The position numbers and the translations under genes were made by a program. From Fimbriosthenelais zetlandica (taxonomy: Eukaryota), in the NCBI GenBank assembly GCA_977030845.1, contig OZ365114.1, forward strand, positions 14,508,001 through 14,572,000: 64,000 nucleotides of DNA. Direction: 5' to 3'. Shown here one piece after another: positions 1,561 through 57,305 of the stretch. How positions within the stretch are numbered: the first letter of the stretch is position 1; every line of letters starts with the position of its first letter. A model generated the notes under the pieces. The model saw nothing but the letters and a program-made list of their open reading frames with translations, did no database searches and was not told where the DNA came from.

Positions 1561-1735
1561 CATCTTCTGACAAGCATCATTGAGCGTCCGGTGGAGGTAG
1601 GTTTCGCCATCGTTGAAATGTTTGGGACAGGTTGGTTTGGTTGGGTCGTTGGAGTCGCAGACGATCTCCTGTGCTGAGGTAATCCGGTCACGGGAAATCT
1701 CTAATGTAATGCTGTAGTAGTCCGGGATGGGGTGT
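1561..1735 (-). CDS. Exon 5 (175 nt, phase 2-0): (R)HPIPDYYSITLEISRDRITSAQEIVCDSNDPTKPTCPKHFNDGETYLHRTLNDACQKM
   Basis: Acceptor gaattattccccgcag, donor ATG|GTGAGT at 1560, stop-free, with C-ending codons against an AT-richer background. Phase matches exon 4. The next exon was not confidently located. Confidence 0.85.
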
Positions 1736-3184
1736 CTGCGGGGAATAATTCAGGAGAAGCAATGTAAGCAGAGCTCTTCACACCTTATACAACGAATAGA
1801 TTGATTAGGCCTAAGGCTTAATTACACTCACAAGTTTTCTTAACAGATGATTTACAGTACACTGGCTATAACCATAGGTGAAATATATGGATTTATGTTC
1901 ATACTGATGCTATATCAAAACTGGATTTGTCCAATTACTTAAACTGCTTAGTCCCAATATTAAATCTCTACCTCCTTCAGATATAAAACTATCAACTTCA
2001 AGGACAATTTTCATGCACAGGAATCACGTCGAATAAAGAGAAGTTTACAATATTAGTGGAACAATACATGCCATATATTTGGGATATATTTGGACACTGA
2101 GGAAGTTAGCCGAGTAAAGGTATCACACTGAGTATGTAGTTGACAATGGGAATTTTTATATGAAGCATAATTCGGATTTATATTGTTTTATGTTATCGCT
2201 TGGCTGCAGTCTCTGGCATTTTATCGTCACAGCCTGGGAACACAACTGAGGCGAATAGCAGCACAAACTAAAGGCAATGGTCAGGCCTTGTGTTGCATAA
2301 TTAATGTGAAGACTAGATGCTAACCACTATAGGCTGTGATCTAGGAAGGTCTTGATTTGCTGCGGGGGAGTAGGGCATCTCTCAATGTACCACGATAAGA
2401 CTGAATAATGAATGTCCTACTTTTATCATATAGGCGCTTTGTCTCGGACCTTAATGATAATGTAGGACCATTCAAGCTCCATGATTAATTTTTGAATAAA
2501 GGCATTACCTGCCAACATGATCTTGTAGATTAATGGACTCTTTATGTTTTCCCCGTACTATTAAAATTACGACTGTTTCACAAGGATATTCTGTTTCGCC
2601 CAGGATTTAGTTGAAAATGGAATGGATGGATTCCAATTATGCCTGGACTGTAAGCAATGTAGCAGATACCACCTTTAACATCCCCTTAGTCTGAACCTTG
2701 GTCTTTTTGGAGCTTTTCTTAAGAATCTTCAAAGACTATATCACTAACCCAAGCCTCATCTGAGGCTAGATCCCAAAGGACTGCCTTTGGGTGTCTTGAG
2801 ATGTCATTAGTCCCCATATCTTTCTAAATGGTTCCGCAACGGTAGAAAAGGCAAAAGAGGACCAGGCACTGGCAGCCCCAGGGAGCCGTCTATCTCCCTA
2901 AGCTGAATCCCGGATGGGGCTGGAGATGGCATGGTGTCGTCATCAGACCCAAGCAGCGTCTGTCACGGCACAAGTAACACATTCATTACCAGAGGCGCCA
3001 AGCGAGGCGTTAACTGCAATTAACCTGTTCAAAAACATGCCAAAGCCGCGTTTCAAATACTTCCCTCGCTTTCAATGAAGAAGGGGGGAGACTGGGCTGG
3101 GAAGGGCAGGCAATTTCAAGCAGACAAACGGAGCATTAGCGTGCAGGTCTCATTAAATTCCAATCGCTTATCTCAATCACTCAC

Positions 3185-3461
3185 CGACAATAGTATTTAA
3201 CAATCTTCCTGAATTTGGTCTTGTCTTCGCTATTGTTGGGGTTTCCGAGCATGTATTTGTTATCGCTCTCATGATCGGTGTCTTCATATGTAGGGATAAC
3301 GTTCACGTCCATTATGCCTATATTTACACGAAGTCCAGACTCGCGGATCCAATAGAAGTCCACAGCCTGAGTGGAGTCAGTCACATAATATGTAGTTTCC
3401 AGGTTTCGCGTACTGTGCAGATTTTCCAGGAAGATGTTTTCGGATGCCTCGACTTTTAGCC
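3185..3461 (-). CDS. Exon 4 (277 nt, phase 1-2): GLKVEASENIFLENLHSTRNLETTYYVTDSTQAVDFYWIRESGLRVNIGIMDVNVIPTYEDTDHESDNKYMLGNPNNSEDKTKFRKIVKYYCR
   Basis: Core of ORF 3181..3486. Acceptor ggactaatctctcatttccag with a CTAAT branch, donor CG|GTGAGT at 3184, and protein-like composition. Confidence 0.85.
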
Positions 3462-3849
3462 CTGGAAATGAGAGATTAGTCCACAATCAGACCGCATCCT
3501 TTTCAGTACTGTAATGGAGATGAAAAATCATGAATGATGTTCAAAGCAGAGTATCTGATAAATACATCTAATGATCCAATCTATTTTAAACAAAATAGGT
3601 ATATTCTATACTGATAATAGACATAGCAGAATCTCTAAAAATCTAATCCCATTTTTACATAATCTAAGTTGATTGATTGATAAAAGGGCTCTTGTTAGTA
3701 GTTTCCTATCGTCTTAAGTGTATCTGGATGATCTATATATACACCACCTATTCTTATCTAGCTAATAATAATCCTTTGGATCTAGCTAACCCAGAAGCTA
3801 TATAAGGGACTCTGTGGTGGTCACTCTAGTGGCCAACCTTTGGTTACTA

Positions 3850-4110
3850 TATGGGCAGAAATAGACTACCACCTCATCGCGCGAGTTCAATATACTCTCA
3901 CCAATATTCCTATAAACTTGTGTCGAGAAGAGAAAGCTGGTAAAAGTGAATTACCAGCCTTAACACCGGGATGTGGTAAACGTCACAGACTTAACTCCGC
4001 CATGGAGCAGGGCTCAGACCATAGCTCACCTGGACGGCAGCCACCCTGGATGGATCAAGACTGACCCACCCTGGAGGCACCATCAAGCAGGGAGAACGTG
4101 GCCACTCCAG
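3850..4110 (-). mobile_element. Degenerate Ty3/Gypsy reverse transcriptase fragment
   Basis: Minus frame VPPGWVSLDPSRVAAVQ...LRLVIHFYQL resembles the Gypsy RT segment G..DP.KV.AI..W...YYR.FI. Interrupted by stops. Confidence 0.35.
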
Positions 4111-7100
4111 GCAGTTAGACAAAACTTACACACACTAATACTTGGAAAGATATATCAGACTGAAAAACGGGCAATATAGAACTTTACATGGAAAAATATA
4201 CTTATTGTTCTTCTCTGTATTCTCATCTCTCGATATATTTTTTTTCTTTGTATGTTAACAATTGGATAAGAACATTTTGATCTAAAAAAGGGGGAAAGAA
4301 AGAACGGCGCCAGATAGTAGTACACAGACTCGCTCTACGAGTGTAGGATGTGACTATGGCCATCTAGAATGGGTAGACACTGACAAGGGAAAAAAAGGAG
4401 GACACAATGCATAGTAGCCTTGCTAATTATATTAGCCGGCTGCTATAGTACAATAAGACGACCATAGTAACAAAACTGTAGTGATCTACTCCTAAAATGT
4501 CCAAAGCATGCAACAGAAAGGCATTTACAATGACAAATCCTCTTGGAGATCCAAATTAGATGAAAATTGCAACTGGATCAGTGAAAATACAGATGAAAGA
4601 TACTATTGGAATTGAATGAAAATTTTGAAATGTAAATTGCAATATCATTAAATTTTGTCATATGGTTGATTAAAATGAAGAGTATGACGGTTGGTACAAA
4701 CATGCATGTGTAGCCATCTTACACAAAAGTAGGGTACACATCTACCCCAGCCTGAATCAGAGTAAACAATGCATCTTTCACCACCAAAACCCTTAATGAC
4801 ACAATCATAATCTGAAGACCTTCATCTAAAATGTTTTCACTAAAGATCACAAGCAGAGTTCTTCCGGCTTGTTCCTGAACAAGAACCTATCCTCAAAAGG
4901 TCATCCAAGTAGGCCTACATGAGTGAAGTCTTTGTTGGCGGAGGTACTTTTTTTGGTACTAGATTATAGTGTAAATTTGGCATGGGGGTTATATTCAGTT
5001 CCGTTCACAGGAATTTTAACTGTATATCTATCGGCAATATTAATGTGTCATAGATCTGGACAGCGGCAAGAAGAATTGTGGAGGAGGATGCTCTGATGAA
5101 ATTTCCTATATATATTGGTTTGGATGAACAGCACTAATGATCTGATATGAGTTGTTATTAAAATGATGATAACTGCTAAAATAAATTCCACCAACACCGG
5201 ATATATAATAATCAGACTGAAGCCAAAGCAAGAGTTAAAATGAGAATAGGAAATGGCCAGAAGGATGTGTTCCCATGTTTTGTGTACAGATAACCAGCAG
5301 AGTTGGAATACAGATAAGAAAAGAGATTGAAACATGCGATAATACAGCCCTCTACCAAGCGCCCATCCCAAAGAGAAAGGCGAGCTGACAAAAGCCGGTA
5401 AGGATCAGCCAACAAGCGCGCACAACTATGCGAGTCAGGCATAGAGTACAAGCACAAATTCCAAAAGTTATTAAGAAAATGCACCAAGCGTCCATGAGAG
5501 AACGGCTTCAACATGTAAAAATAACTTGCTTTTACGCGTTTTGTGCACGGGCTTCTTCTTTCTCAGTGCTGCTGAAAGAACGGTCAAAAAAATCCGACAA
5601 GAGTATAATGCTCTGATTCTGAGTGCACAAAGGGCACGCTCACAGTCACAGAATGCTCTCTCATCAAAACTAAGAAAAAAAAGGGAACCAACCGAAATCT
5701 ACCAGACATTCATTGGGGATCGGAGTTTGCTCCATGCTTCAGGGTTATTGGGGGGTTCAGTACTGGGACTGTGTAGGACACAAGAAGGTATAGTGGAGAG
5801 GCCATAACCTGCTACAGCAGAGAGCTGCATTTGGTTTCCTAACCTATGGTCATGTGACCCTGTCAGGACACTTTGATTGGCTAATCTCGTAGCAGGTGAC
5901 ACTCAACATACATGACAAGGAAATGGTGGGTTCATCGGGACCAAGGCCGTAATAGAAAGGCATGGGCGGAACGTTGTACTTGTGATGTTTGTTGAGTGGG
6001 GAGGCGGGGAAAAGACCTAAACATGTAAATGTACAGTGACAGACGAAGACAAGAGACATGGACAGATACAGGACTGATCCAAACAACATACAACTCCCAC
6101 AGAAGCACACTGATGAAGGGGAAGAGAAGCTACTAGGTTGTTACCATGGAATGACTGCACTGTTTTAGAGGCTAAGAAAAGATGACATCCCCCTTGTTGG
6201 TCGTTAAATAAATAAAGCAAAGTGAAAGTTTTCCAGGCAGCTGCATGGGCGAGTCTGGCAGGCATGTCAGTATATGAGGCATTAAGCATTATAAGACTGA
6301 GTGTGTATAATATATGACACGTCAATGAGTGTCACTTGGCTGCAAGCATACATAGACCGACGAGTCCGCTGTCATTTGACATAATTTCTTTGTAGAAACA
6401 GTTTGATTCAGAGAAAGACACATTCATTCAGCAGAAGTCTTGAATAGACCTCCACAATGCATCCAAATTTAAAATTCAACTCCCTAATAATTTTACCTGG
6501 AATTAATATTCACCAGGATAAACACAAACACCTTACAGAAGGAGCAGGATTTTTTGACTTTGCTAAGCGTTTGCGTCAGCCTATCAATAAAGACCTGCAG
6601 CAGGTGGTGGGTTTTACAAAGGCACTGTATAAGAAACTTTCCTCGGTCTTCCTACTTTATCTTTCCACCATTGTGAGGCGCCATTGTTCCGATCCGGCCA
6701 CTGTCAATTAATGTGACCAGAGCTTCGAATGGATAGAAGGTGGACAGGATGGTCGCGAGAGTCAGGATAAATCCACGACAATCAGCCGTGCACATTTGAC
6801 TTGGGTACGGTTCTTTTTCTGCAATTAAGCATGATTCTGTCATAATTGGTATGGACAAAGCATATCAGAAGCAGAGCAAGTCACCTAAATCTTAGCTGGA
6901 TGGCGTTTTCTAACTTATTCATGCTACAGCAGACCTAGGCCTTTTGGGGCCGACCAGGGAATGCTTATTTATTCATAACCACCTCACTTAGGATGAGAAT
7001 CACTGAGATGCAGCTCAGCCCGGTTCTCCGGAAGCAGCAACAGCGCGTGCGCCTCGGCTAAATCTTGGCCTGCAGCAAGAAGACACTCAGCTTGCTGACA

Positions 7101-8099
7101 CTCTCATCAAAAGCGGAGAAATTTGAAGATACTGCATTAGCATAATTTACCTCTCACATGGTGATGGTCCCCTGTAGGGTGATACGCACAGGGCATGAGC
7201 CTTTTTGGAACACTTTTGCTTAACCTGCCTAGATCTAAGTCAATTTTATCCAACATGGCTTTAGAGTTCCTCCTTTACTCAATACCTAAACAGCTATTAG
7301 GTCTAAATACAATTCATTATCAGCATAGCAGATGGCCCATCATTCTTCCCTGCAAATTTAGTATCACGGTAATATTTCTCTGAAAGTAATCGTTCTCTTT
7401 AAGAGAGTCTTTTAATTTCTAGTTGCAAGTACAAAAAAGAATATGCATACAGTAAGGTGGATACTAGGACTTTGCTCAAGAGGGACCTGAAGGATTTAGT
7501 ACTGAAAAAAGAAGAATGGACTCGACATTAATGCTCTTCCTCCTTTTCTACCCCTGTCAAAAGATGGCCATTAAAAGAGGCTATCTGACCTGACCCTCCA
7601 GGGGGATCTATAGACTAGGCCCCGGCCCCTGGCATGGTGGGGATATATTAGCCATCAGATAGAGTGTATGTGGCAAATGTCCCCGTACAGCTCCCATTCA
7701 TTGCTACATGTGTCCTAACACTGCGTCTCAAGGAATTGTTTCCTTCCTTATGATGAGTTGCCGTCCAGACCGACCCCACAAGGACTCTCTTGTTAACCAC
7801 GGGTCGGTGCTTTTTCTATAAAATATGACTACGCCTGACCAATAGCCAATAGTTTTCATGGTTTTTTGCTTGGTCTAAAGCAAGCTATGTCTTCAGGCTA
7901 GATATAGTTACACTGACCTCACCTTACCTTACCGTGGATGATACATTTTACATAATTTCAATTTGCATTTCGAATCCGAAGATTAATTCTCAGTTTATCT
8001 TATTGGTATCAAGTAACTGGAAAAGCTTCTAGTGTAGCAGGAAAAAGCTTCTATATTCGTCAATGCTACATGCCTGCAGAAAATGAATTGCTGGTCTCG

Positions 8100-8700
8100 A
8101 AGATGTTTCGCCATCCAAACCACAAAGTTTGAATTCTGCCTAATCCTTCTCAGATCCACCACAGAACTAAAACCACATGCTCCAGCTTATTGACTCAGAA
8201 AGAAGTTACATTTGTCATAATCCTTTGACAAGAGAATGCCTGATATCCCGATACGGAGACTCAATGTTATGGTCAATGAAGTAAATACTGATGCAGGGCA
8301 TTTCGTTAAGTTACCATTTGTACATTTCAATGGCTTGAAAAATATTTACATTAGATATTGTGATATCCAGAGTGCTCGGAACTACTATTTTCAGACAGTA
8401 TTTTCTAAATTGGTATTGAACCACACCAATTCAGGAGTGTTCATTACATGCATCATCGTCATTATCATCATGCTGTCATGCGAAAGCAAACAGAGCATGC
8501 TTCTTTGACCTTCCTTGACCTTTCAAGATCATGGAACATGCTCCTAAAAGAAGGCAATTGCAAAGGCAACATAACACAAAGAACACATAATTCACACGCG
8601 AGTCTGGTACTTGTAGACAAAGACAGGACATACAGACAGAAATACATATATCATTTTGGACCGTTGAAACAGATGGCTGTAACATTATACTTTAACAAAA
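8100..8700 (-). mobile_element. Degenerate Ty1/Copia RNase H remnant
   Basis: Minus-frame motifs VNYVFF...RSKKHAL, NVNIFQAIEM and HNIESPYRDIRHSLVKG resemble Copia SGYVF/SKKQ..VA/DN.SAI/KHIDIRYHFIRE. Shares the 16-mer TTCCTTGACCTTTCAA with the 42.2 kb fragment in the opposite orientation. Confidence 0.5.
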
Positions 8701-8939
8701 CATATTTCCATGTACGAATAGTTAAAGAAAAGCAATTTCAAGAACATTACACTGAATCAAAAACCCCCAACGCTCTTCATCGAAATCCTAGTATAGATAA
8801 AGGCGTGTTTTCATTGGATAAAATTCCCATCTCATTTCCCGGGAACTCCTGACCATGAATACTTGTGATGAACTCGATGCCTCGGTGGCCACATGAAATC
8901 TTCATATGCTAAATTGCTATTGATGACTCCAAAGATTTA

Positions 8940-9570
8940 TTCACTGGGACGTAGATTTTATTAGGATGCAGTTTGCATTCGTTCTGGCACCCCACCGTCT
9001 GCTATTCCAATGGGATGAATGGAAGATAACACCAAAGTGGTTCAGCTGTAAGGGCTGAGACACCACATTTTGGTGGCAGCGAGAAGATACAATTGCCCTG
9101 GGCCTTGAATATACAGCTAAGGCGAATAGATCCCCGAGAAAATATTGACCGCCAACAGTGGATTTATTGGAAGGAATCAGCCTGGCAAAAGTCATCCATT
9201 ACAGTTACTTCCACTTGAATATTGCCAGGAATGAATTGTTCGATATTCATTCATTTACAGAGTTATATTCAGCGAACACGATCTGGAAAAGCAAAGTAGC
9301 CATGTCCCAGTTGTGTACTCAACAAAGATGGGACCTCTAATCTAATTCCATGGAAGATGGAGTTTTTTGAAGGGTTGAATGCAGACGGCCGTGGAGAGAG
9401 GATCTTGAGGGAGTGACTTGGTGGGCTGCTGATGCATTTTCTTGATTCTACCTGCGTGCCGTCTATAAAGGGTGGGAGTGATGTGTTACCCGATATAACA
9501 CTACAAGCTGGCGACTCGCAGTATTTATCTTTCCAGTCCATTAAGGTCCCATCAGCACAGGTAATAAACC
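8940..9570 (+). mobile_element. Possible L1-type LINE ORF2 C-terminal (zf-RVT-like) remnant
   Basis: Trp-rich plus frame with FWWQRED, FDIHSFTELY, IWKSKVA and VECRRPWREDLEGVTWW. Several stops. Confidence 0.35.
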
Positions 9571-14483: not shown

Positions 14484-14525
14484 AGCATGGTGCTTTCTCA
14501 TATAAGCATGGTGCTTTCTCATATA
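14484..14525. repeat. Perfect 21-bp tandem duplication (AGCATGGTGCTTTCTCATATA x2)
   Basis: Read directly: 14484-14504 equals 14505-14525. Confidence 0.95.
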
Positions 14526-14749
14526 TATGAACGTGGGATCTGAATTGTTTTCAAGGTTCATAAAAGGCATGTTAATGAGCAAATAATGTGAATAGATATT
14601 GGTCCACATCAGCGACAAATAAAGGATTGTGGAGTCAAATGGAGCAGTCCCTGCCTACACATCACCCTACACACCATTGATTCCTTCCCAGCCTCACACC
14701 ACAGTGACAATATCATGGGATGGAAAGAACGAGGCAGGAAAAAACTAAG

Positions 14750-23609: not shown

Positions 23610-23666
23610 CCTCGAGGTATGTTGGGGTGGTCTTCTCCCCAGAGATCAGGAGTGGGTGGGCGGCAT
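23610..23666 (-). CDS. Exon 3 (57 nt, phase 1-1): (H)AAHPLLISGEKTTPTYLE(G), linker
   Basis: Acceptor gctaatgccatgcctgtgttttttccag (CTAAT branch plus pyrimidine tract) and donor GAGG|GTAAGT at 23609. Phase-compatible with exons 2 and 4. Confidence 0.75.
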
Positions 23667-24375: not shown

Positions 24376-24447
24376 GCATGCACTGCCTGTCAGTTGTTCC
24401 ACCACAGGGTCGTACTTCATACATTGACCCACTGCACTCGGTGCAGG
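24376..24447 (-). CDS. Exon 2 (72 nt, phase 1-1): (A)CTECSGSMYEVRPCGGTTDRQCM, second TNFR-like Cys module
   Basis: Acceptor ctaat...ttttatctgtgtttttcag with a CTAAT branch motif, and donor GTAAGT at 24375. Cys spacing is C-x2-C-x9-C-x7-C. It joins exon 1 in frame as DRVCV-A-CTEC. Confidence 0.85.
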
Positions 24448-40689: not shown

Positions 40690-40960
40690 TCTAGCGATAA
40701 TGAGATTACACATCGCCCATCCACGCATTGTCTCGTGATGCGGCGTTAAATGGCAAGAGAGCATTTTTATCACCACGCAGAGAGTTAGCTTGAACGGCAA
40801 GATAGGAGTGCTGCTGCTCTTGGCGAAGTTCTCTTCTTGAGAATTTTATTGCTTCAAGTGCTCGGTCTCGTCAGATTTTTATCTGAAATCTGTTGAATTT
40901 AAAGCGATATTCAAGTCTTATAAACATCTCCACAACGGCAAATAAGGATCGAATCGAAAT
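40690..40960 (-). mobile_element. Retroviral-type (probably Copia) integrase core remnant
   Basis: FQIKI.RDRALEAIKF...QHSYLAVQANSLRGDKNALL resembles IK.LRSD.G.EF...H..S..Y.PQ.NG..ERKN..L. Confidence 0.4.
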
Positions 40961-42049: not shown

Positions 42050-42520
42050 GGTCTTTTGTATTATGTTGAACAAATATTTCAAGCAATAGTAAACAAAGCA
42101 GGATGGATCCAAATTCCAGAATCCAATGCTGGAGACATCGTCTGACATTCTAGTCTCCAAAGGAAAACCACTGAGGCACACATATAGACACAAATGGAAG
42201 GTTTCATGGGGATTGTGTATTCCTTGTGAAATATTTCTACTCTTTGAAAGGTCAAGGAAAGCAAAAAAAGCACTGTGTTGTGAAACAATAATAAGAGGAA
42301 TATTGACTACACCAGACAGACTCCCACCTCTGCCTCTCTTTTGTTGATGTTGACTCAAACCCAGCTTTAATGATATTGTGTTTGCCACAAAAAGAACATA
42401 AACTCCACATCTCAAATTGGAGGTGGTCATGCGATCACCCTCGACCTCTGAGGTGTGCCAGACTAACATTGAGAACAAGAATGGGCCAATTTAAATGATT
42501 TAGATTTAGGCTGGATAGTG
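42050..42520 (+). mobile_element. Degenerate Ty1/Copia RNase H remnant
   Basis: Plus frame GLCIPCEIFLLFERSRKAKKALCCET...LPLFC.C.LKPSFNDIVFATKRT resembles GY.F...ISW.SKKQ..VA.ST.E and P..LFCDN...NP.FH.RTKH. Related to the 8.5 kb fragment. Confidence 0.5.
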
Positions 42521-46400: not shown

Positions 46401-49400
46401 GATTTATTCCATTGCCCAAGACAAATGCTGCAGGGCCTGATACTGATTAAGATAGTATCACGCTGCTAAGGTAATAAAGGCTGAGGAAGCGGGCAAGCAG
46501 TTTTTTGTATAACTTATTGGGTCGTGCCAATCGGATCCCGTTTTTATGTGGCATTCGGCAAGGATGCTAACGTGAGAAAATTACATGGGCGAGAAGGTGG
46601 CGGGGGTTGGGGGCACAATGGAGCTCAGCCCGCTATGTAGTCTCTCCGACTCAGTGAGGGACTCTACCAATACACCATTACAATAGCTTTTATGAGACAA
46701 CACCGCAACTGCTTTCATTTTAACTCATATCATTGTACTGGGGTTCCCTTTTCACCATTGAACATTACTTTGAAATTGCATTCTCTTAGGATATTAAATT
46801 CATAAAACAACTTTTCTCATTGCCATCCCTCTGGGAGTGCTCATAAGGTTTAGCCACTCCAACAGTACCAAGGAAGAGGAAAAAAGCCCCCAAACCCACC
46901 ATATTTATATCCCGAAAGGAACACCTTTTTCTTGCAACACTACCATACAGTCTCCCCACTCGGGAGTGCTCAGTGGATTCAATATGATGCATATGTTGCC
47001 TCGATGCATATGAAAGGCCAAAATGTACAGTCTGCACTGGCCACGTATGCCCCTCAACATTCGCTATCATCCATCAAGGAAGCACTAGTCTGACCAAGTA
47101 AGTCTAACAGGTCTTGCCAGTGCTTTCAGACAGCTATGAATTAAAGTCTAGTCTTCCTCTGAATAAGATATGAAAAGATCCTCTTGGAGCATCGCCAGGA
47201 CGGAGAAAAAGCTTCATGGCCCGCGGCAATTCATGAGGTGCCATACAGAATGTAACACATGGCTAGATAATGCTGAGGGTATTCCCAGATGTTATATGGC
47301 CTGCAAGTATAGATAAATGTCCTCTCATGTTCTGATAAATGACAACACATGGACAGAATAGGAGATCAATCCAGGGGTCCTAGCCTCTATACAAGACAAG
47401 TCCTAAAATAAAGAATAGGATTAGCAATGTTGGATACAATATACCAAGGTATGGATTAGAGCATAACTTTAACTTTCGGAAAGATCAACCCTTAAAACCC
47501 TTATGCAGACCAGCATACTATGCAGCCGGGTCAAACCAAAGACTTAAAAATTGGAACTAGTGGCTCCCTCACTTGGCATTCAACACTAACAGGAAAGTAG
47601 TAGGACTAGTCGGCCTGGTGTCTGGATAATGTGACTGGGTGAGGTATCACGTCATAGGACTCTCTGTCACAAGTAGGCAGCCTCAGGATATAACGGAAAA
47701 ATTGATGAAAGTGACATTAAAACCAATTAAACAGCAAACAACAAACCTTATTATGCTTGCTTGCTCTCTTCAAACATTATCAACCGATTGGAAATTGAAA
47801 ATGGCAATGGTCTATGTTGATTGCTGGCAGCCTGTTGCATTTAAATCACAGGCTGTGCCAGGTATTGACTGGTGATTGTGAGAAATAAGGGGGGACTATC
47901 CACATATCACGCCCAGCATGGCTATAGGTGTGAATAGTATGGACCAGTCCTCACCCTTCCCGCCCAACAATGCACCAGCTTTAGCCTGAGATGCAAGCAA
48001 AGGCGGCCACACAACTGAGCAAATAGGAGAACAGCCGGTACAATATGAAGCCCTATGAGCCAGAGGGCTTATGACCTCTTGCTGGCCAGGAACCGCTATC
48101 AATCACAGCTGGTCATGGAACCGGCCACGGGCTACGCTGGTTTACCGGTGTGCCTGCTCCCAAGGCCTACCATCTAGCCTAACCAATAAAGTGGCCCCCA
48201 ACCTCCGGGAGTCACGGGTGAATATAGTATATTCAATATGTCAAATGGCCATTAACCCTTCATGGAATTATCCTATTTATACAAATGCAGCTCTAAGCTA
48301 ATATGAACTTTCATGGGGCCGATCATTAACGCAAACCGACATGCCGCAAGGTAATTTAAATAGCGTGACAGAATCAGGTTATTGAGTCATATATATTCAA
48401 GAATTGCCCCAACTGAATAATGTAGAGCATTTATAATAGGTGGTATCAGTTTAGATGGATTAAATGTAGGCTAGGTATGATAATCAAGGATGCGGTTTCC
48501 TTCAACACAGAGTGAGAGAAGCTTTCTTGTGATGCTGCTTGTTATACGAGCACCTGCCCATTGGCTCGGCATTTTTATCCCCACATGGATTGAACACTGG
48601 AGACGGGCTCATATTGCAGAGAACAACAGAGAGGCAACGTGATATACGGCATGAAAAATGTGAACAGCATTAATACTGATTAATTCAGCTCCATAAAAAT
48701 GGGATAATCATCTTGCATCACAACAGATCCTAGATATTGCCGCCACTCAGCCTGGCTGGAGGGTGTAAAGAAGTCCTCACATGAAGGACATAAACATGTC
48801 ATATTTACGAACGTTATGAAAGGCAACATTATAGATATATATTGTATGAATATTGGAGCCTTGCAGGCTTTTATGCAGTTCTTGTATTCATTTAGCTCTA
48901 GGCCCTTTCATAAGCATCTTGATACAATGCATGAATCATGAATGTATACACTTTTACCATTGATTGTATTTATTGTTGATGGGCATGTATATCGCTAATC
49001 CTCTTGTTTAAATCTTGTTTCTCTTATTACACCTAGGTATGACAAGATATCAGAAACCCTAGGGAAATAAGCCACAACTGTTGAGAAATGCACTGCTCAG
49101 CAACTGATGGTTCTCCAGATTGTTTAGAAATGTGCCTTGTACAAAGTTCCCAAATACATTCAAAGACTAAAGCATTTGCAACAATGATGAAAAACACGCC
49201 TTTTTGTCAAACAGGACAGATTGTCCTAATGTTCCCTTCTAACATTCCTTTGAAAGGAACACAATTCACAGCATTTTCAATGACACTGTTACACTGGCAT
49301 CATCTGTTCCTTATAAATACTGTCTGGTACAGTATACAAGGCATTGTAATTATGGAGGCCAATGTTGCTCTTTTATGCTTCAGACATTTAGCGAGGGTTA

Positions 49401-49799
49401 AAAAAACATATGCAGACAAGCATTTTTACTCTGGTCTTTGAGCATAACACTGGCAGGTTCAATCATGGCTTAATATATACAACAGTGAGGGTTGGAGGGG
49501 GAGCAGGTGGCCGGTAAGGGACTGCTCCCTGTTCACTAACAACTCCCTGTAAAGGATTCAGAGCCAAGAGCACAGAAAACATATGTACTGTCAAAGCCCA
49601 TATAGGGGTAAAGGTATCTCTCTGTTTATAGCTAATAGAGCTTCAATGGTACATCATGTATGAATATACCCGCTTACACCTGTATTCTGAGCAGTGTGTT
49701 ATGCGGGGTCAAATCCAAGGGAAAAAGGGCAAAATAGAGATGAGATGTTAAAAGCCGACATGCAAATGTAGCATAAAGGTGTCAATATCACAGTTGAAC

Positions 49800-50450
49800 T
49801 TTAATGCAACAAAGATACAAAAACAAACAAAAGAAATGCCTTTAGCTAGTTGGGATTGGTATCAATATATAGGCTAATAGAGGTTGGAGGGAGGATAGGA
49901 GCACCTGATTCAAAAAATAAATAAATTCAAGACAGATTATCAAACAGATGGTTGAAAAATACATGTTTGTCTGTTGATGATTTTAAGGGCGGTTGAGACG
50001 ATATTTCACTAACGCCAGTAATAATTCTTTGATGCTTTTGAGCAGCACACCAACATAGCATCCCTCACAGGATGTGCACGCAATATTCTACTATAATGAC
50101 TAAAAACGTTCAAACAGACTTTGATGTTCTTCATTCCAGAAACCTCCCGTAGTATGCCCAAGGCTCTATTGGTAGTTTTTACTTTATAAGTTCGAAGAGC
50201 GCATTAAATTTTGATTGCTTTTAGGAATAGGCGTTGGTTCCTTTCACGTGGATTTCTCCTTGGACCAACTAAAAATGATCAACTGCCTACTCAATGTACG
50301 CTTGAAAGATGGATTGACCCGGCTCAAGTCCCACGTTGAGGTCCCAAGTGGAATAAAGCTACAAGTGGTATCAATATTGGCAAATTGCATCTTCTAAGCT
50401 TATCGGGAATATACTTGAGAGATAAGGAACACTCCTCCTCCATATTGTAA
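49800..50450 (-). mobile_element. Degenerate Ty3/Gypsy RT-RH fragment
   Basis: LYSTWDLNVG (FS.LDL.SG) followed downstream by ILPPTSISLYIDTNPN.LKAFL (L..PD..PF.L.TDAS..G.GA). Confidence 0.35.
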
Positions 50451-51249
50451 GCCTTTAGGTCGTTGGCCACGATATCAAACCAGAAGATATCATGTATTAC
50501 AAAAAAACTCAAGTTCTAATTGTACTTGTGCAGCTTGCATGTTCTTGTAATCATCAACATGACTGCTATGCCGCCTGCTCTAGAGCCGATTGGCATGCTT
50601 TTTACATGTCTGCGCTCTTTCTTCACCTTTCTGAACCTGTGAAGGTACAATCAAGCGATGTAGCATTGGGATAAACCTTCAGACACTTTTGAAGTTAGCT
50701 GAAGCTTCATGACTGAAAGATCAGATATGAAGGCAATTCCAATTAATGAACTGGGTCAAATGCAACCCTCTTCTGGAGCATGCTCCTTCAGTACACAAGG
50801 GGACCACTTTACTCTGATGAATTAGCTGGTCAAAACCTCAAAAAAAATGTGATAAAAATGAGTTTGATAATTTAGATTCACAGAAGGGAATCAAGCAAGA
50901 AAGATAGGAAGACAAACTTAGGAGAAAGCAATATTATAGGGGAATTGTTTCTGTGTCAGGAGTTACAATAGAAGTAAGCTGAGAATATCTAAAGGGTTGT
51001 TCAAAAACCCTCTTTGATCCCTCAGATCTATCCCCAGTGGACACAATATTGACGTACAATAGTGGAGGATAGAATTAGAGAGAAGAACAAAGGGAAAAGG
51101 GAATGTTTAAAGCAAATTACAACCCATGCTTCAGTATCGACAGATTCTGGGTTCGAAATAAATACGTCCGGTGTGAATGGAACATCTGGCACTTATAACA
51201 TACACTACAAATCAACCTTATAATCTCATGAAATATCAACAGCAAGGGG

Positions 51250-53000
51250 TATGAATCATTTAAAATTGCAATAAACAGAAGACAGAGGTGAAGGGAAATG
51301 GTCGCGGAGTGAGGTCGTCTCGAACGGAAAGGAAGGTTCTGAGAATGTAGTCATCTCGAGGGGTAAAAATGGCCGAGTCTCCTTCTCGGAATACTGGCTG
51401 GAGCACCTCGAAACAAAGTTGCCAGGCGATCCTGTAAATGTCAGCTCATCAGGGATGACATGGCGGGGGCCAGACAAGACCCCATAAACAAGCCGCAGTC
51501 TCTATCAGGTGTAAAATACTTCTCCAAGTAAGCTCCATTCTCACCAAGCACGTAAAGCCTTCTTAAATGGCATGGCATATTGGCCGAGTGGCCGGGTCCA
51601 CTGGGACATAAAACACACATGTATTGTGTGTAACGTTGGGAAGCATGCAGCCTGGGCCCCTAACGACTGACTCTTTCCCCCACTGGATAAACGAGGGGGT
51701 GTGTTATTTCAGCACATCAATGGAGCAGGGTGGAAAAAGCCAACGGAGAGCTAATCTTAGAAAAGGCTCGAGGCAAAAGGAGCAGCAGTTAAAAGGCTGA
51801 AAATGAAACAGGAATCGACATTCAAGTTACAACACCCTCGAAGAATGATAGCTGGATGAGGGTGTTACAAGAAGAAACACTTGTCTTTCTTGGTGGTATC
51901 ATAGCAGAACAATCGAAGCGAATAATACACTAATTAGTTCCAACCAAAAGCTTTTTTCTGGTTCTAGACAGCAAGAATGTCTAACAACTGCTCAATAAAA
52001 GCATAGACTTTGAAGGACAGCAACGCCAAGCATGTCATGCTTACATTGCTAAAGGCTTTTTCTCTTACAGTCTCAGTGCTATCTATGGCTTGCTTGTATT
52101 TATGTAAGAAAGAGTAGAAGGTGGCAATGAAATTGGATCTCGTGAGAAGGTACCCTTGCTGTTGATGGCAGGAACTGGTATAAAGGGGCCATGTAGCTAT
52201 CAAAAGAGAGCAATCAATTCTTTCTCATTATGTTATATTCCATTGATACCAACTTGATAGGCATAGTTATTAAGAGGTAAGGAGCCTCCATGATGGCCAA
52301 AAGCTATTGGTATGAGGCATGGATGGGCATATATTTTGGATGGCCGTTGCGCCCCTTTTGTGGCTTAATTAGGCATCGCCATTAGGGTTGATGAATGGGA
52401 GATAGGCGGGGCCATATCCCTTTTTAGTTTTATGCTAATCACCTGATGCCAGTTCCAAGATGGCAGAGCCAGCAAGATGTATAGCACTGCCTTAGATGGT
52501 GCTGTGCCACCAATGCCAGAGATAGATGATATATCAAGGAAAGTCCACAATATCTTTCATCATTTCTCCAAAGCACTCTGGATGTTTTAATATCTTTCCT
52601 TGGCGTGGTAGCAACATATTATATTGCCCACAGTATTCTCACTTCCCCCGAGCTGCACAGTGGTGCTGGCTAGACTGTCCAGTAAACAGCGCAGGTCTGA
52701 CACTCTCATGGATACAGAGATAAAAGTCTCGCTAAAAAGGCGTAAACAAGCGATTGTTTGGAATTAAAACCCCAGGATGGGCTGCTTTTGGGAGCTATAA
52801 GTCATTTACAAGGGTAACATTTAGGTTAATGGCAATTGCCATTTGCTAGAAATGACCTTAATTACGGCAGGCCACCCCATAGCACATAACATATATGTAG
52901 AGGTGTTCAACGAAAAACCCCCATTTCCTTTTTCAAATCCATTAAAACCTTCTTAGCTTTTCAATCATGGATCTGCCTTTGTATTCATAAATTTATTCAT
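51250..53000 (-). mobile_element. Degenerate Ty3/Gypsy RT-RH-integrase
   Basis: VTLVNDL (YLDD-like, ~52810-52830), LWTFLDISS (LRSFLG), WNWHQVISIKLKRDMAPPIS, LIPIAF...NEKELIALLIATW (RH), and GPRHVIPDELTFTG (integrase, ~51430-51470). Confidence 0.55.
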
Positions 53001-53899
53001 AAAACCGCAGCCTCGCTCATATACTCTTGACAGGTTATTCTTTGTCTCCGGGCAGAAATGACAAGAAAGTACATTCACTTTTTCCGCTCGTGTTATAGAG
53101 CAGCAAAAGGCACGTGACTTTTCTCATCCATATAGCAAGCCAGATATAATGTGAATGATAAATATTTGATTATGCTTGAAAGTCGAGGGAGTTCCATGTG
53201 CAAAAGAAGCATAATAACCCGCAGGGGGACACATAAATCTCAGATCGCTCATTTTAAGAGAGCTTCTTTGTCAAGTATAAACAACAGAGTAACTTTTAAC
53301 AGGGACTCCTCATTTATAATATATACATGCAGTTAATATGAACAAGATAGGGCAAGCGAGGAAATTGGCCTGTCCGACAAATTGCAGCCACTGCGGTACT
53401 GGCCAGGGGACCACTTTAAACGTGAACGCTACACTCAGCCGAGGCATAACTTCTGGTGGGCTTTTTCTTGGTATTCTATTCAACATGTGGAGACACGTAA
53501 ATCTTGACAGTTTCGTTTCTAAGTTTGGTTTAAAAGAGGCCAGAGTCGATGGTAAGTGTCGGAGCCGAGGTGGGCACGGCTCCGCTGGGGATTGCTCCCC
53601 TGCACTTTCTCATTACATAGCCCAGCTGGGTAGTAACTCATTTCTGACACCTTGCCCAGAATACAAAGCGTTTTAAATCAACCTTGAATAGTTGTCACTG
53701 AGTTATGTGCACTGCAAAAGGGACCTTTCTTCCATTTGAAGAGTATACTCCCAAGAAGTAGTAAGATCAAATGGTAGAGTACATGTATGGATATTTATTG
53801 TACCCACAATGTTCAAGCCTTTTTCATCATCACCGTAAATTAATAATACCCTTTTTCCTCCACACACTTATTAACTTCATGAATTGAGTGGGGGAATTA

Positions 53900-55000
53900 A
53901 TTGCAATAATACTTCCTTGTTGGAAAGGCTTGATGGATGTGTAAAAAAATAAGGGTTAATAGGATTTCTTGGAATGGTGTGTCTATGGTCCATGTTGCAG
54001 ATGCACCTCATCAAAAAGCGAACATTGCTATCTTTATTCCATCAATCAAGAATCTTTTATGGATGTTTGTGAAAGAGAAAAAACAACAAATGAGATGTCA
54101 TTCCCAGTTTATTTTTGCCGATTAGGGTTCTTAAATTGTAGTTTCAAATAACATAAAAAGAGACCCGGCAACCAAGGAGGCAATCATTGCTTGAAGGACG
54201 AAATCAATGGCAAGATGAGTGAACATTAAATTTAGATCCATATGGTTTTTTGCCACTCGCATTTCAATTATTCAGATCGATACAAATGGCTCAGTATATA
54301 ACGCTCAAGCCTGACATATTGAAACAGAATCCATGCTCAACACCTTGAAAGGCTTCATCATATTATTCCTCACCATTGGAGTGAAATGTACTTGAGATGA
54401 AGGCGGCGTATTGAGTGTCTCCTTTTAGAGCAACCATTTCTCAACTCTGACATTATCAAATTCAACCTTGACTCTTACCAGTTTTGTGGTTGTATAATTT
54501 TATAGTTCATCCAGTAACAACTGGCAGTCCTCCAGATGGTGTTGCAAATTTAATACCTTAGCCGATTTCCATTTACTTATAGCAGTAAATACTGGGATAT
54601 ATTCTATACAATGTATTAGACCCATCACACCAATCTAGTGAATATTCTGCTAGGACTGCATAACTGCTACAATCGTATTTGTGAGATTTCCCCACAGCCA
54701 AATACGATGGATACTTTGAACTAAGACCAGGGGATGCAGACTCCTTCTTTACCATACCATGGTCATATATTTTACTGCACATTTAATCCCTGGGGATGGC
54801 TGAGCTGGAGTGGGCTAAGATAGAGGGATAAGGCCTGGTGATCAGGCGTGGTGGCCTGCAATCGTCTGAGAACATTAGGCTAGACTGGGATAAGTACTAT
54901 ACTGCTACCACCACAACCACTACTCCATACATATACATACACTCTCTTTTTATAAGAGGATAGTGTAAGTAAGCCATTATTCCGATACTTAAGTAGCTCT
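53900..55000 (-). mobile_element. Degenerate Ty3/Gypsy integrase fragment
   Basis: WLWW.QYSTY...CSQ (zinc-finger region), IEYIPVFTAISKWKSAKVL (YIL.AVD.FSKW.EA) and PSSQVHFTPMVRNN. Confidence 0.4.
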
Positions 55001-55717
55001 TCCCTGTAGTAGATGGCTTTAGGCAATCATTTCTCTGGACATTCATGCATCTGGCTATATGTATATATTTCATATGACTTTCAATTCTCTGTAAACCAGG
55101 AGGTTTTGACATAGCAAATTCCTGTTGCTCTATTCAGGTTGTCCTTCGGGGAATAGCCTTTTATACACCTCTTCGGAGGAAATGAAAATTTCTTGCACTT
55201 GCGTCAATATCATGAGATTGTAGACTATCAGTGTGTTCGATGATAACTACAGTTGGCAGTTGTCCTAAAACGGATACTTACCTCGATACAGTCATTCTCA
55301 TGAGGTCCCCTATAAAAAGGACCCAGATGATAATGCTGGACAAGTTGATGATGAAGCCCTTACTTGTCCCAACTTAGAGAGACGCCTAAATAAACAGCAA
55401 TATTTTTCTGATTGATCTGGAAAATGCTTTGCATGGTGGCGGGGTATTAGAGAGACGGCTTATTTCTCTCTCTGATAACTTTATAGTTGCGCCTGCCGTG
55501 TGAAGAATGCATTTCTCTCCACTTAACAGCAGCTGCGCCGTCTTTTTAAGCAACAGCAGCTTTTTCCCTCACCAACGTGTATTCCCATTTGACAGCTAAA
55601 GATTCATTCCTCCATTTGATCTGTGCGGTATTAAAGACACCCACAAACGGGATGTCCACCAGCATGGAACTGCTGACATGATATTCAAATACAACAGAAG
55701 GACCTTTTCCTTTTGGT

Positions 55718-55762
55718 TGATACCCAATCTATACCTGATACCCAATCTATACCAATCTATAC
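55718..55762. repeat. 18-bp tandem duplication plus 9-bp partial copy (TGATACCCAATCTATACC x2, AATCTATAC)
   Basis: Read directly from the sequence. Confidence 0.9.
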
Positions 55763-57124
55763 AGTTCTGCCTCTCCGACCAACTGAATGTAACGCTTATT
55801 GCAAAATGCCAGGTCAATTGTTCCACCAATTCTTTTTAGCGGGGGGAAGTTGTTAAAAAAAAGAACAAGAAGAAAACAAGATAACGAGAACTGGGCAACC
55901 AGAGATAACAATTTGATGGACGAAAGAATTCCATATTAATTGCCTCCAAATCAAATCGTCTGGCCAATGCATGTCCTGCAAATAATCAACTATTGACTTG
56001 GGAGTTTGGAATGACAGCCAGTCGAAACGTGCGTGATGGTTGCCACCCAAAGGAATTCATGTAGAGTAAGGAAAACATTTCGCAAATGGATCACTCGGGT
56101 AATGTTCAATTGCAACTCTAGTTGCCAATAGTTGCTGATGTGGAGTGTTTCCCACTTCCTCTACCGCTAGCCAAGGAAGGGCCTGTCTGCCCAAGTCTTA
56201 CCATGCATGTCACTCACTTCTCAATACACAAGGGGCCGGATTGCCCCTGAGGGGCCAATGGGAATGTACAAATCACAACAATACCTCGTGATTAGGCTGT
56301 CACCACTGCTTGATAAATGGTCAATAGCACATCATTTTTTCCCATAATAAAGGGCGGGAGGAAATCAATAAAAAATAGCCCTTATTGGGATATACATAAA
56401 TGGCATGCAAGGGTTACAGGGGGAGTACTCTGAGCCCTCCATATCTATAATGAACATAGACTAATTGTTTCTAGTAAGGGGGACCTTGTCCATGGGGAGG
56501 AAATCTCGCTGAGGACATCTCTTCAATTAGATTTACCACAGCAGGGATTCAGGGACAAGGAGGGCGCTGCTGTGTCGCCAAGGATTGTTTTTATTCTTCT
56601 TCCTTGGGCTTTCATCGAGGGGACTCAGTCAATCGGCAATAAACATAAAAGGGACGTAATGATATTAAATGGCAAAGCGCTCGGTCTTGTACCTTCGGTA
56701 AAATGGACAAAAATAAGCTGGGGATGGAGATGGTGTGGCTTAAACATTCTGAGGTAGCTAACTTAAAGACGGAAAAAGATCCATCACAGGCTAATACAGC
56801 AAGGGACGGGTGAAAATCATTGGAGTATAGATAAGACATCCCTTTTAGACATAAAATACATGCAGTACATCAATAAATCTTGCTTAATAAAAGACTGAGC
56901 AAGTACTCCGACATAATACAATTTGCATAACAGATCAATACATCTGGGCATAAAAAGTCAGGAAGGTATAAAATATTGTTTATAACCTCTCATATGAGAT
57001 TTTTCTTGCATATTTCTTCGTATAAAACAAGCCATGTTTCACTAATATGACTTTATGACTGCGTATAAACTTGTTTAGTATCTATGGCTACATGCTATAC
57101 TATAATGTCAGAAAGTCTACTCAC

Positions 57125-57305
57125 CAACACAGACACGGTCTCCATTCGTCCCACATGGGCTTGCCTCGTACTGTCCAGGGGGACATCCAAAACTGCAGGC
57201 TGCAGTACAAGAAGAAATGCCCAGCATTATAACATATACAGTTGGCAACAACAGCTCGGCAGGCAACACAGTATGGGCAACCCGTAGCACAGACATCGTG
57301 TCCAT
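57125..57305 (-). CDS. Exon 1 (putative first coding exon) of a secreted TNFR-like cysteine-rich protein: MDTMSVLRVAHTVLPAELLLPTVYVIMLGISSCTAACSFGCPPGQYEASPCGTNGDRVCV
   Basis: Open frame from ATG 57305 (alternative ATG 57296). It has a hydrophobic core LLLPTVYVIMLGISS, then a Cys module C-x3-C-x9-C-x7-C, and ends at the donor G|GTGAGT (57124) in phase 1. An internal acceptor (ttcttcttgtactgcag|57199) could instead define a 75-nt phase 1-1 exon. Confidence 0.75.

What the first reader, a model, noticed from the sequence alone, without database searches (positions are those of the whole stretch)
1561..57305. Hidden five-exon gene spanning 56 kb encodes a putative secreted protein with TNFR-like cysteine modules
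Seen: five minus-strand segments, each bounded by GT-AG sites (three with a CTAAT branch motif 16-28 nt upstream of the AG). Their phases chain 1-1-1-2 into one 762-nt stop-free frame: MDTMSVLRVAHTVLPAELLLPTVYVIMLGISSCTAACSFGCPPGQYEASPCGTNGDRVCVACTECSGSMYEVRPCGGTTDRQCMHAAHPLLISGEKTTPTYLEGLKVEASENIFLENLH...KIVKYYCRHPIPDYYSITLEISRDRITSAQEIVCDSNDPTKPTCPKHFNDGETYLHRTLNDACQKM. The junctions read naturally (DRVCV-A-CTEC, YYC-R-HPIP). Inference: this is one gene. Exons of 57-72 nt separated by 20-33 kb of TE debris are easily missed or fragmented by annotation.
Basis: partly seen in the sequence, partly recalled or inferred. Interest (0 to 1): 0.8.

Follow-up and report, generated by a model that had tools for sequence, protein, structure and literature searches.

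The report
Start of a fusogen-like membrane gene
The five scattered pieces are real exons of one conserved animal gene, but they are only the front eighth of a very large membrane protein whose outer part is predicted to fold like the proteins that viruses and gametes use to fuse membranes, and the proposed start and signal peptide are probably intron.

Summary
The exon chain is real. All five minus-strand segments have GT-AG borders and join into a 762-nt open frame. The joined protein aligns as one block (residues 36-254) to 1,570-1,860-aa annotated proteins of molluscs, annelids and a nemertean, for example 45% identity and E 2e-63 to Tubulanus. All four intron positions and phases match the Lottia gene. 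Exons evolve under purifying selection.

Two parts of the reading fail.
- The ATG and 'signal peptide' (57305-57200) are probably intron. Lottia has a phase-1 intron exactly at 57199, a strong acceptor sits there, conservation in a distant relative starts there, and the 35 upstream codons change neutrally.
- The product is not a small secreted protein. Relatives are multi-pass membrane proteins.

An AlphaFold model of the relatives' ectodomain (pLDDT 78) matches class II fusion proteins only: hantavirus Gc, EFF-1/AFF-1, HAP2 and archaeal Fsx1. Its nearest AlphaFold DB cluster is named 'HAP2-GCS1 domain-containing'. Exons 4-5 encode the start of that fold. No RNA data could be listed, and fusion activity is inferred, not shown.

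The parts
57125..57199 (-). Conserved 75-nt phase 1-1 exon encoding (A)CSFGCPPGQYEASPCGTNGDRVCV, the first TNFR-type cysteine module.
   Evidence: 24 of 24 in-frame codons encode the same residues in relatives L003 and L004, and all differences are synonymous third-position changes (0:0:8 and 0:0:3). L003 nucleotide similarity is limited to 57218-57118. Lottia has a phase-1 intron at the same codon. TNFR_c6 scores 23.7 bits.
57200..57305 (-). Most likely this is the 3' end of the upstream intron (pyrimidine tract and CAG acceptor at 57201-57200). Less likely it is an alternative first exon.
   Evidence: Differences from L004 are spread 7:7:6 over codon positions, with 13 of 18 changed codons non-synonymous. 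The first ATG is GTG in L004. There is no nucleotide similarity in L003 upstream of the pyrimidine tract. Relatives do not align to residues 1-35.
24376..24447 (-). 72-nt phase 1-1 exon, the second TNFR-type cysteine module (CTECSGSMYEVRPCGGTTDRQCM).
   Evidence: TNFR_c6 scores 24.2 bits. It is collinear with relatives. The intron position and phase on both sides are the same as in Lottia.
23610..23666 (-). 57-nt phase 1-1 exon, a poorly conserved linker between the cysteine modules and the fusogen-like ectodomain.
   Evidence: It lies inside the single HSP with full-length relatives. Lottia has an exon of the same kind with the same phases. The matching model segment (residues 72-95) has pLDDT under 50.
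3185..3461 (-). 277-nt exon (phase 1 to 2), the first beta-strands of the class II fusogen-like ectodomain.
   Evidence: 119 homologs were found, and fragment hits start at GLKV and end at YCR, exactly at the exon borders. The ortholog in L001 is 72% identical over the exon only, with differences by codon position of 17:8:53. It corresponds to model residues ~98-187, pLDDT 63-91.
1561..1735 (-). 175-nt exon (phase 2 to 0), continuing the ectodomain (HPIPDYYSITLEI... long beta hairpin). It ends in the donor GTGAGT, and the next exons lie beyond window position 1.
   Evidence: Relatives run straight on from exon 4 to exon 5 at the same residue. The phase-2 intron in YYC-R-HP is identical in Lottia. 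No further exon was found in 1-1560.
5511..5625 (.). Conserved non-coding element in intron 3, about 2 kb upstream of exon 4.
   Evidence: It is 78% identical to L001 8429-8541 in the same order and orientation. It has no conserved frame and is unique in the window.

Best explanation
The window holds five consecutive internal exons of a long-intron animal gene: 57199-57125, 24447-24376, 23666-23610, 3461-3185 and 1735-1561, minus strand. The gene belongs to an unstudied protein family found across Lophotrochozoa (gastropods, bivalves, annelids, a nemertean, and probably a flatworm).

Full-length members have 1,570-2,040 aa. From N to C they carry:
- one to three N-terminal hydrophobic segments;
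- a short juxtamembrane region;
- an EGF-like module and two TNFR-type cysteine modules;
- a roughly 560-aa ectodomain predicted to have the three-domain class II fusion-protein (fusexin) fold, ending in an Ig-like domain III and a stem;
- a membrane helix, followed by four more helices joined by long helical loops.

The window encodes the two cysteine modules, a linker, and the first ~150 residues of the fusogen-like ectodomain.

Shown: the exons, their junctions by homology, purifying selection, the family, and the membrane topology pattern. Predicted: the class II fold. Inferred: the protein acts like HAP2, EFF-1 or viral class II proteins. In that case the tip of domain II inserts into an opposing membrane, and domain III and the stem fold back to pull the two membranes together. 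The cysteine-rich cap and the 5-helix tail would serve in recognition or regulation. Gamete or somatic cell fusion is the most likely role.
For: Exon chain. Exon 4 finds 119 homologs.

Collinearity: a single HSP over residues 36-254 at 35-45% identity to annotated proteins of Tubulanus, Patella, Haliotis, Owenia, Lottia, Nucella, Bulinus and others.

Intron positions: same position and phase as the Lottia model for all four junctions, for the exon-5 donor, and for the extra acceptor at 57199.

Selection: third-position bias of substitutions against relatives.

Transcript of a relative: a 5.7-kb contig with an uninterrupted 1,801-aa ORF.

Topology.

Fold: AlphaFold2 model of the ectodomain has pLDDT 78 and pTM 0.61.
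- Foldseek against PDB: the top 50 are all class II fusion proteins, E 8e-10 to 8e-8, with 297 hits at E<=1e-3.
- AlphaFold DB clusters: the best hit is a 2,047-aa 'HAP2-GCS1 domain-containing protein', E 7e-36, followed by phlebovirus-G2-like and HAP2 entries.
- Swiss-Prot models: the top 11 are AFF-1, HAP2 from six species, and archaeal Fusexin 1.
- BFVD: bunyavirus, alphavirus and flavivirus glycoproteins.
- The protein-language-model neighbours of the Patella member are viral envelope glycoproteins, but weakly, 0.65-0.69.
Against: No RNA or DNA run holding this sequence could be listed, so no junction is shown by reads in this species.

The fold is a prediction on a relative from a 20-sequence alignment. 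TM-scores to class II proteins are low (0.12-0.26), and rigid-body alignment recovers only the Ig-like domain III (Z about 9).

Pfam HAP2-GCS1 (PF10699) is not detected in any of 20 members. Sequence profiles find no HAP2.

The extra membrane helices, and an N-terminal anchor that may tether the ectodomain at both ends, are unlike any characterised fusogen. The C-terminal half matches no known fold.

No expression or functional data exist.
Confidence: 0.72

Rival explanations
1. Transcription starts upstream of 57305, ATG 57305 (or 57296) is used, and the hydrophobic stretch is a signal peptide or signal anchor. In this lineage that would be the main form or an alternative-promoter isoform. 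The rest of the large membrane protein still follows.
For: The frame is open for 54 codons upstream of 57199 and the ATG has a good context (A at -3, G at +4). Relatives L003 and L004 also keep an open frame with a Met and a hydrophobic stretch here, and their indels are multiples of three. The Nucella model P0095 also goes from a hydrophobic segment almost directly into the cysteine module. Patella and Haliotis have isoforms with different N-termini.
Against: Substitutions against L004 are neutral in pattern (7:7:6 by codon position), whereas the adjoining exon shows 0:0:3. The first ATG is GTG in L004, and nothing aligns in L003 upstream of the pyrimidine tract. An ancestral phase-1 intron sits exactly here in Lottia, and the acceptor signal is intact in all three species. 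The open frames of the relatives were found through an ORF database, which only holds open ones. All RefSeq models carry anchor plus EGF exons upstream.
Confidence: 0.18
2. The family only shares the class II architecture and is not a fusogen. It would be an adhesion or receptor protein whose beta-rich ectodomain and TNFR-type cap bind a ligand, with the 5-helix tail signalling or scaffolding.
For: There is no sequence-level link to HAP2. The TNFR-type modules are ligand-binding units in known receptors. The multi-pass tail and the N-terminal anchor are foreign to known fusogens. Fold similarity alone does not show function.
Against: Every one of the best structural neighbours in four libraries is a membrane fusion protein or its endogenous copy. 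Domain III is followed by a stem and a membrane helix, as in fusogens.
Confidence: 0.3
3. The family descends from a viral class II glycoprotein gene captured by an early lophotrochozoan, that is, a domesticated endogenous viral element, rather than from cellular HAP2.
For: The best viral hits (5e-11, bunya-like glycoproteins) are as good as or slightly better than HAP2 hits (5e-9). The language-model neighbours are viral envelope polyproteins. The string of ectodomains and membrane helices recalls a glycoprotein polyprotein.
Against: The gene is intron-rich, with intron positions shared between Lottia and this genome. It is present in several phyla. No viral hit comes closer than superfamily level, and the in-family AlphaFold DB neighbour carries a HAP2-GCS1 label. 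No retroelement or viral genes lie next to it in the window.
Confidence: 0.12
4. A chance chain of open segments, or a dead pseudogene.
For: None beyond the lack of RNA data.
Against: E 2e-63 collinear homology, conserved intron phases, and a strong synonymous bias of substitutions.
Confidence: 0.01

Closest known systems
HAP2/GCS1 gamete fusogens (fusexin superfamily)
   Same: The predicted ectodomain has the class II three-domain layout, followed by a stem and a membrane helix. Swiss-Prot HAP2 models of Tetrahymena, rice, Nematostella, Arabidopsis, Plasmodium and Chlamydomonas are among the top 10 structural hits. The nearest AlphaFold DB cluster is labelled HAP2-GCS1 domain-containing.
   Different: No Pfam PF10699 match in 20 members and no sequence-profile link. 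The family has an EGF and TNFR-type cysteine cap in front, hydrophobic anchors at the N-terminus, and four further membrane helices with long helical loops behind. It is two to three times longer than HAP2. HAP2 is single-pass.
EFF-1/AFF-1 somatic cell fusogens of nematodes
   Same: Class II fold. AFF-1 is the top Swiss-Prot model hit (2.8e-9) and EFF-1 is rank 2 in PDB (1.6e-9). Both are cellular, intron-containing genes.
   Different: EFF-1 and AFF-1 are single-pass type I proteins of about 600 aa without a cysteine-rich cap. There is no sequence similarity.
Viral class II fusion glycoproteins (bunyavirus Gc, alphavirus E1, flavivirus E) and their endogenous copies in nematodes
   Same: Best PDB and BFVD matches (hantavirus Gc 8e-10; bunya-like glycoproteins 5e-11). 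The ectodomain is followed by paired membrane helices.
   Different: This is a host gene with many conserved introns in several phyla. There are no companion protein (Gn, E2 or prM) domains, and no viral neighbours in the window.
TNF receptor superfamily cysteine-rich domains (e.g. DR5/TNFRSF10B)
   Same: Exons 57199-57125 and 24447-24376 encode TNFR_c6-type modules. The family profile matches DR5 repeats (E 3e-4), and relatives pass the Pfam threshold.
   Different: There are only two modules, used as a cap on a large unrelated ectodomain. There is no death domain or TRAF-binding tail, and nothing else of a TNF receptor.

Membership tests
Lophotrochozoan 'TNFR-Cys domain-containing / uncharacterized' 1,570-2,040-aa membrane protein family (e.g. 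Lottia LOTGIDRAFT_173315, Patella LOC126808473, Haliotis LOC124118669) | Collinear sequence similarity across the cysteine modules, the linker and the start of the large ectodomain | tested here: met
   A single HSP covers residues 36-254 at 35-45% identity, with E down to 2e-63.
Lophotrochozoan 'TNFR-Cys domain-containing / uncharacterized' 1,570-2,040-aa membrane protein family (e.g. Lottia LOTGIDRAFT_173315, Patella LOC126808473, Haliotis LOC124118669) | Shared gene structure (intron positions and phases) | tested here: met
   Five introns and the exon-5 donor are at identical codons and phases in Lottia L002 and in the window.
Lophotrochozoan 'TNFR-Cys domain-containing / uncharacterized' 1,570-2,040-aa membrane protein family (e.g. 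Lottia LOTGIDRAFT_173315, Patella LOC126808473, Haliotis LOC124118669) | N-terminal anchor and EGF exons, and the C-terminal 5-helix half | not testable with these tools
   These lie outside the 64-kb window. A profile of the N-terminal module finds nothing in the window, and no further exon lies in 1-1560.
TNFR/NGFR cysteine-rich region (Pfam PF00020) | Score above the Pfam gathering cut-off (29.4 bits) | tested here: inconclusive
   The window exons were scanned separately and give 23.7 and 24.2 bits, each covering profile positions 17/18-39. Relatives score 30-34 bits, and 18 of 20 members match.
Class II fusion proteins / fusexins | Three-domain beta-rich ectodomain (I, II, Ig-like III) followed by a stem and a membrane helix | tested here: met
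   This was tested on a predicted model of a relative. Foldseek gives probability 1.00 to Gc, E1, E, EFF-1, HAP2 and Fsx1 in four libraries. Domain III is at model residues 556-655, followed by a low-confidence stem and a membrane helix. Caveats: TM-scores are low, and VIA aligns domain III only.
Class II fusion proteins / fusexins | Membrane fusion activity; hydrophobic fusion loop at the tip of domain II; trimeric post-fusion hairpin | not testable with these tools
   This needs cell-cell fusion assays and a solved structure.
HAP2/GCS1 | HAP2-GCS1 domain (Pfam PF10699) detectable by sequence | tested here: not met
   No PF10699 hit at E<=1 in any of 20 family ectodomains. Profile searches find no HAP2. 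The only link is the label of the nearest AlphaFold DB cluster.
HAP2/GCS1 | Single-pass type I topology and male-gamete expression | tested here: not met
   The topology of relatives is multi-pass. Expression could not be tested.

The most novel reading that the evidence does not exclude
This family is the missing cell-fusion protein of spiralian animals (molluscs, annelids, nemerteans, flatworms). It would be a highly diverged HAP2-type fusexin that gained a TNFR-like recognition cap and a five-helix membrane tail, and that drives sperm-egg (or somatic) membrane fusion in phyla where HAP2 was reported as lost from 'most bilaterians' (PMC2766252).
Probability: 0.3. Interest if true: 0.85.

Novelty: new variant of a known kind. 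Interest (0 to 1): 0.6.

Why it matters
The membrane fusogen of fertilisation is unknown for most bilaterian animals. HAP2 was described as lost from most of them (PMC2766252), and reviews still treat the animal sperm-egg fusogen as an open question (PMC7688107).

A conserved, intron-rich, purifying-selected gene family across Lophotrochozoa whose ectodomain is predicted to be a class II fusion protein gives a concrete candidate. It can be tested with standard cell-fusion assays and knock-outs in spiralian models. Its unusual architecture (a cysteine-rich cap in front, five membrane helices behind) would also widen what a fusexin can look like.

For this genome, the practical result is a corrected partial gene model. 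It has five internal exons, the real 5' and 3' ends lie outside the window, and the proposed start codon should not be used.

Tried and rejected
- **RNA evidence.** Two run searches (the exon 4-5 stretch for RNA; exon 4 for any kind) listed no run, so read laying could not be used.
- **Atlas search with exon 4 alone.** It gave only weak beta-helix-type bacterial neighbours (0.55-0.65) and was discarded.
- **Weak Pfam hits.** MG1 for exon 4 and Pox_I6_C for exon 5 are chance level.
- **Further exons in 1-1560.** None is convincing.
- **Upstream anchor and EGF exons.** A family profile finds none in the window or in the relatives' loci.
- **tRNA, Rfam, tandem repeats.** Nothing relevant.
- **Transposon content of the introns.** No domain in the ten longest ORFs, no self-repeats, and no hits with a relative's retroelement ORFs.
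- **Prominin/Tweety-like reading of the C-terminal five-helix half.** I proposed this from topology. Foldseek gives no match (best E 4), so it is dropped.
- **ESM Atlas shape search of the ectodomain model.** Uninformative.
- **Sequence-level link to HAP2.** Pfam on 20 members, a profile against PDB sequences, and a profile search of 5.8 billion proteins were all negative.
- **Literature.** Searches for HAP2 or fusexin together with molluscs, Spiralia, Lottia, Schistosoma or TNFR found no paper describing this family.
- **Whole joined protein.** The 254-aa joined protein was not sent to the remote search or folding tools, because it has no reference. It was used only in local scripts.


Full report
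**1. The observation**

A script joined them as 181 + 72 + 57 + 277 + 175 = 762 nt and translated them to 254 residues without a stop. Every internal border is AG|exon|GT. Donors are GTGAGT or GTAAGT and acceptors are pyrimidine-rich. CTAAT lies 14-29 nt upstream of the acceptors of exons 2, 3 and 4. Exon 5 ends in GTGAGT, so the gene runs off the low end of the window. No convincing further exon lies in 1-1560.

**2. Is it one real gene?**

Exon 4 alone (91 aa) was scored against 1.84 billion representative proteins. It found 119 hits, 83 of them at E<=1e-10.

- Most hits are exon-sized ORF calls on unannotated eukaryotic contigs. Their similarity starts at GLKV and stops at YCR, which are exactly the borders of exon 4.
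- The long hits are annotated 'uncharacterized' or 'TNFR-Cys domain-containing' proteins of 1,570-2,040 aa. They come from Tubulanus (nemertean), from Patella, Lottia, Haliotis, Gigantopelta, Nucella, Batillaria, Bulinus, Biomphalaria, Aplysia and Plakobranchus (gastropods), from Sinanodonta, Solemya and Tegillarca (bivalves), and from Owenia and Helobdella (annelids).
- The joined 254-aa protein aligns to them as a single HSP from residue 36/37 to 254. Examples are 45% identity and E 2e-63 to Tubulanus residues 383-605, and 41% to Lottia.

I then mapped the Lottia gene model on its genomic locus L002. Its introns fall at the same codon and in the same phase as all four window junctions:

| Window junction | Phase | Position |
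|---|---|---|
| exon 1/2 | 1 | one codon before CTxC |
| exon 2/3 | 1 | after the last Cys codon +1 |
| exon 3/4 | 1 | – |
| exon 4/5 | 2 | inside YYC-R-HP |

The exon-5 donor (phase 0) also matches.

The exons are under purifying selection:

| Comparison | Differences by codon position | Synonymous / non-synonymous changed codons |
|---|---|---|
| exon 4 vs ortholog in L001 | 17:8:53 | 43 / 16 |
| 75-nt cysteine exon vs L003 | 0:0:8 | all synonymous |
| 75-nt cysteine exon vs L004 | 0:0:3 | all synonymous |

Nucleotide similarity to L001 covers the exon and stops at its borders. A 5.7-kb contig of a relative (L005) carries an uninterrupted 1,801-aa ORF, which means a spliced transcript with the same domain order.

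No sequencing run holding this sequence could be listed, neither RNA nor DNA. Junction reads from this species are therefore missing.

**3. The 5' end is probably wrong**

No relative aligns to residues 1-35. Lottia has one more phase-1 intron, one codon before CSKSCPDGYY. That corresponds exactly to window 57199, where the sequence reads ttcttcttgtactgcag|CC TGC AGT.

Two closer relatives were found through their ORF calls and fetched as L003 and L004.

- From A36/C37 onward they are 25/25 identical in protein. Upstream they diverge.
- For the more distant L003, nucleotide similarity is confined to 57218-57118. That is the pyrimidine tract, the 75-nt exon and the donor.
- For L004, the 35 upstream codons differ at codon positions 7:7:6, with 13 of 18 changed codons non-synonymous.
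- The first ATG is GTG in L004, and an in-frame TAG lies further upstream there.
- That 78% identity equals the non-coding background between these two genomes, which is 66-83% over 1.4 kb.

The hydrophobic 'signal peptide' is largely the translation of a T-rich intron end. I therefore read the unit as an internal phase 1-1 exon, 57199-57125.

An alternative first exon reading through this acceptor cannot be excluded without cDNA. I give it about 18%.

The upstream exons that relatives have (hydrophobic anchor, juxtamembrane motif, EGF-like module) are not in the window. With introns of 20-33 kb, that is unsurprising.

**4. What the protein is**

Exons 57199-57125 and 24447-24376 each give a sub-threshold TNFR_c6 hit. 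Relatives pass the threshold, and the family profile matches the DR5 cysteine-rich repeats. The TNFR-like reading of these two exons therefore holds.

The protein is not a small secreted one. Relatives have one to three hydrophobic segments before the cysteine modules, an ectodomain of about 750 aa, and then five further membrane helices separated by loops of about 50, 280, 130 and 150 aa. Pfam sees nothing beyond EGF and TNFR_c6.

I folded the ectodomain of the closest full-length relative (Tubulanus 361-1043) with a 20-sequence family alignment. The model has pLDDT 78.3 and pTM 0.61. The fold searches gave:

| Library | Result |
|---|---|
| PDB (Foldseek) | 297 hits at E<=1e-3. The top 50 are all class II fusion proteins: hantavirus Gc 8e-10, C. 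elegans EFF-1 1.6e-9, alphavirus E1, flavivirus E |
| AlphaFold DB clusters | One in-family hit, a 2,047-aa 'HAP2-GCS1 domain-containing protein' (E 7e-36, 17% identity, model residues 14-664). Behind it come nematode phlebovirus-G2-like proteins and HAP2 of a slime mould and a choanoflagellate |
| Swiss-Prot models | The top 11 are AFF-1, HAP2 of six species and archaeal Fusexin 1 |
| BFVD (viral) | Bunyavirus, alphavirus and flavivirus glycoproteins from 5e-11. None is closer than superfamily level |

Independently, the language-model neighbours of the Patella protein are viral envelope glycoproteins, although with weak scores.

The matches cover model residues from about 75-125 to about 655. 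An Ig-like domain (556-655) is followed by a disordered stem and the first membrane helix, which is the class II order.

Window exons 4 and 5 correspond to model residues ~98-245 (pLDDT mostly 70-94). They encode the beginning of that fold. Exon 3 is the disordered linker.

Caveats:
- TM-scores are low (0.12-0.26), as expected for hinged three-domain proteins.
- The rigid-body second look aligns only domain III (Z about 9).
- No sequence method links the family to HAP2.
- The model is of a relative, not of this protein.

The C-terminal half was modelled with low confidence (pLDDT 64). It consists of long helices plus five membrane helices and matches no known fold.

**5. Mechanism and rivals**

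The best-supported reading is a fusexin-type membrane protein. By analogy with HAP2, EFF-1 and viral class II proteins, the tip of domain II would insert into the opposing membrane, and domain III and the stem would fold back. The cysteine-rich cap and the helical tail would be lineage-specific additions for recognition or control.

This step is inference. I put about 0.3-0.4 on real fusogenic function, and about 0.3 on it being the spiralian gamete fusogen.

The rivals are:
- a non-fusogenic receptor or adhesion protein that only keeps the fold;
- an anciently domesticated viral glycoprotein, argued against by shared introns across phyla and by the HAP2-labelled in-family neighbour;

A chance chain or a pseudogene is excluded.

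**6. Novelty**

Family members sit in public databases as 'uncharacterized'. One AlphaFold DB cluster label already says HAP2-GCS1.

In the held library I found no paper that describes this family or a spiralian fusexin. Steele and Dana reported HAP2 as lost from most bilaterians (PMC2766252).

I rate it as a new variant of a known kind. It has a class II fusogen-like ectodomain in an unprecedented multi-pass, TNFR-capped architecture.

The finding as written is a real gene whose ends and product were misjudged. Whether annotation missed it cannot be tested here. The claim that the introns are transposon debris found no support.

Noticed in passing
window 58923-58988 (minus strand): A 66-nt element about 1.7 kb upstream of the cysteine exon is 80% identical to L003 7348-7413, in the same order and orientation. 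One frame reads NHNQFNS(E/D)ER(I/L)A.DE in both species. In the window it is flanked by stops and sits in G-rich low-complexity sequence. It may be a small exon, a UTR or a regulatory element of this or another gene.
   Followed up: partly
window 5511-5625: A conserved non-coding 115-nt element in intron 3, about 2 kb upstream of exon 4. It is 78% identical to the matching place in relative L001, has no conserved reading frame, and is unique in the window.
   Followed up: partly
window 58000-62000: A stretch with strong negative GC skew on the plus strand (-0.15 to -0.18) and higher GC (0.46), made of GGTGGCGGTGG-like low-complexity runs on the minus strand. It gives spurious weak protein hits to low-complexity tails of relatives.
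   Followed up: no
In relative L004 an in-frame TAG interrupts this stretch, so it is probably not coding.
   Followed up: partly
L001 16402-20366: In the relative, the intron downstream of the exon 4 ortholog holds a retroelement (RVT_1, RT_RNaseH). The window has none at that place, and its exon 5 follows after 1.45 kb.
   Followed up: partly
L005 (SRR21102237 contig) and proteins P0132, P0134, P0153: The long isoforms of relatives carry an extra N-terminal signal-like segment, a roughly 120-aa region and another membrane helix before the anchor. The shorter RefSeq isoforms (Patella, Haliotis) lack this part, so the family has alternative N-termini.
   Followed up: no
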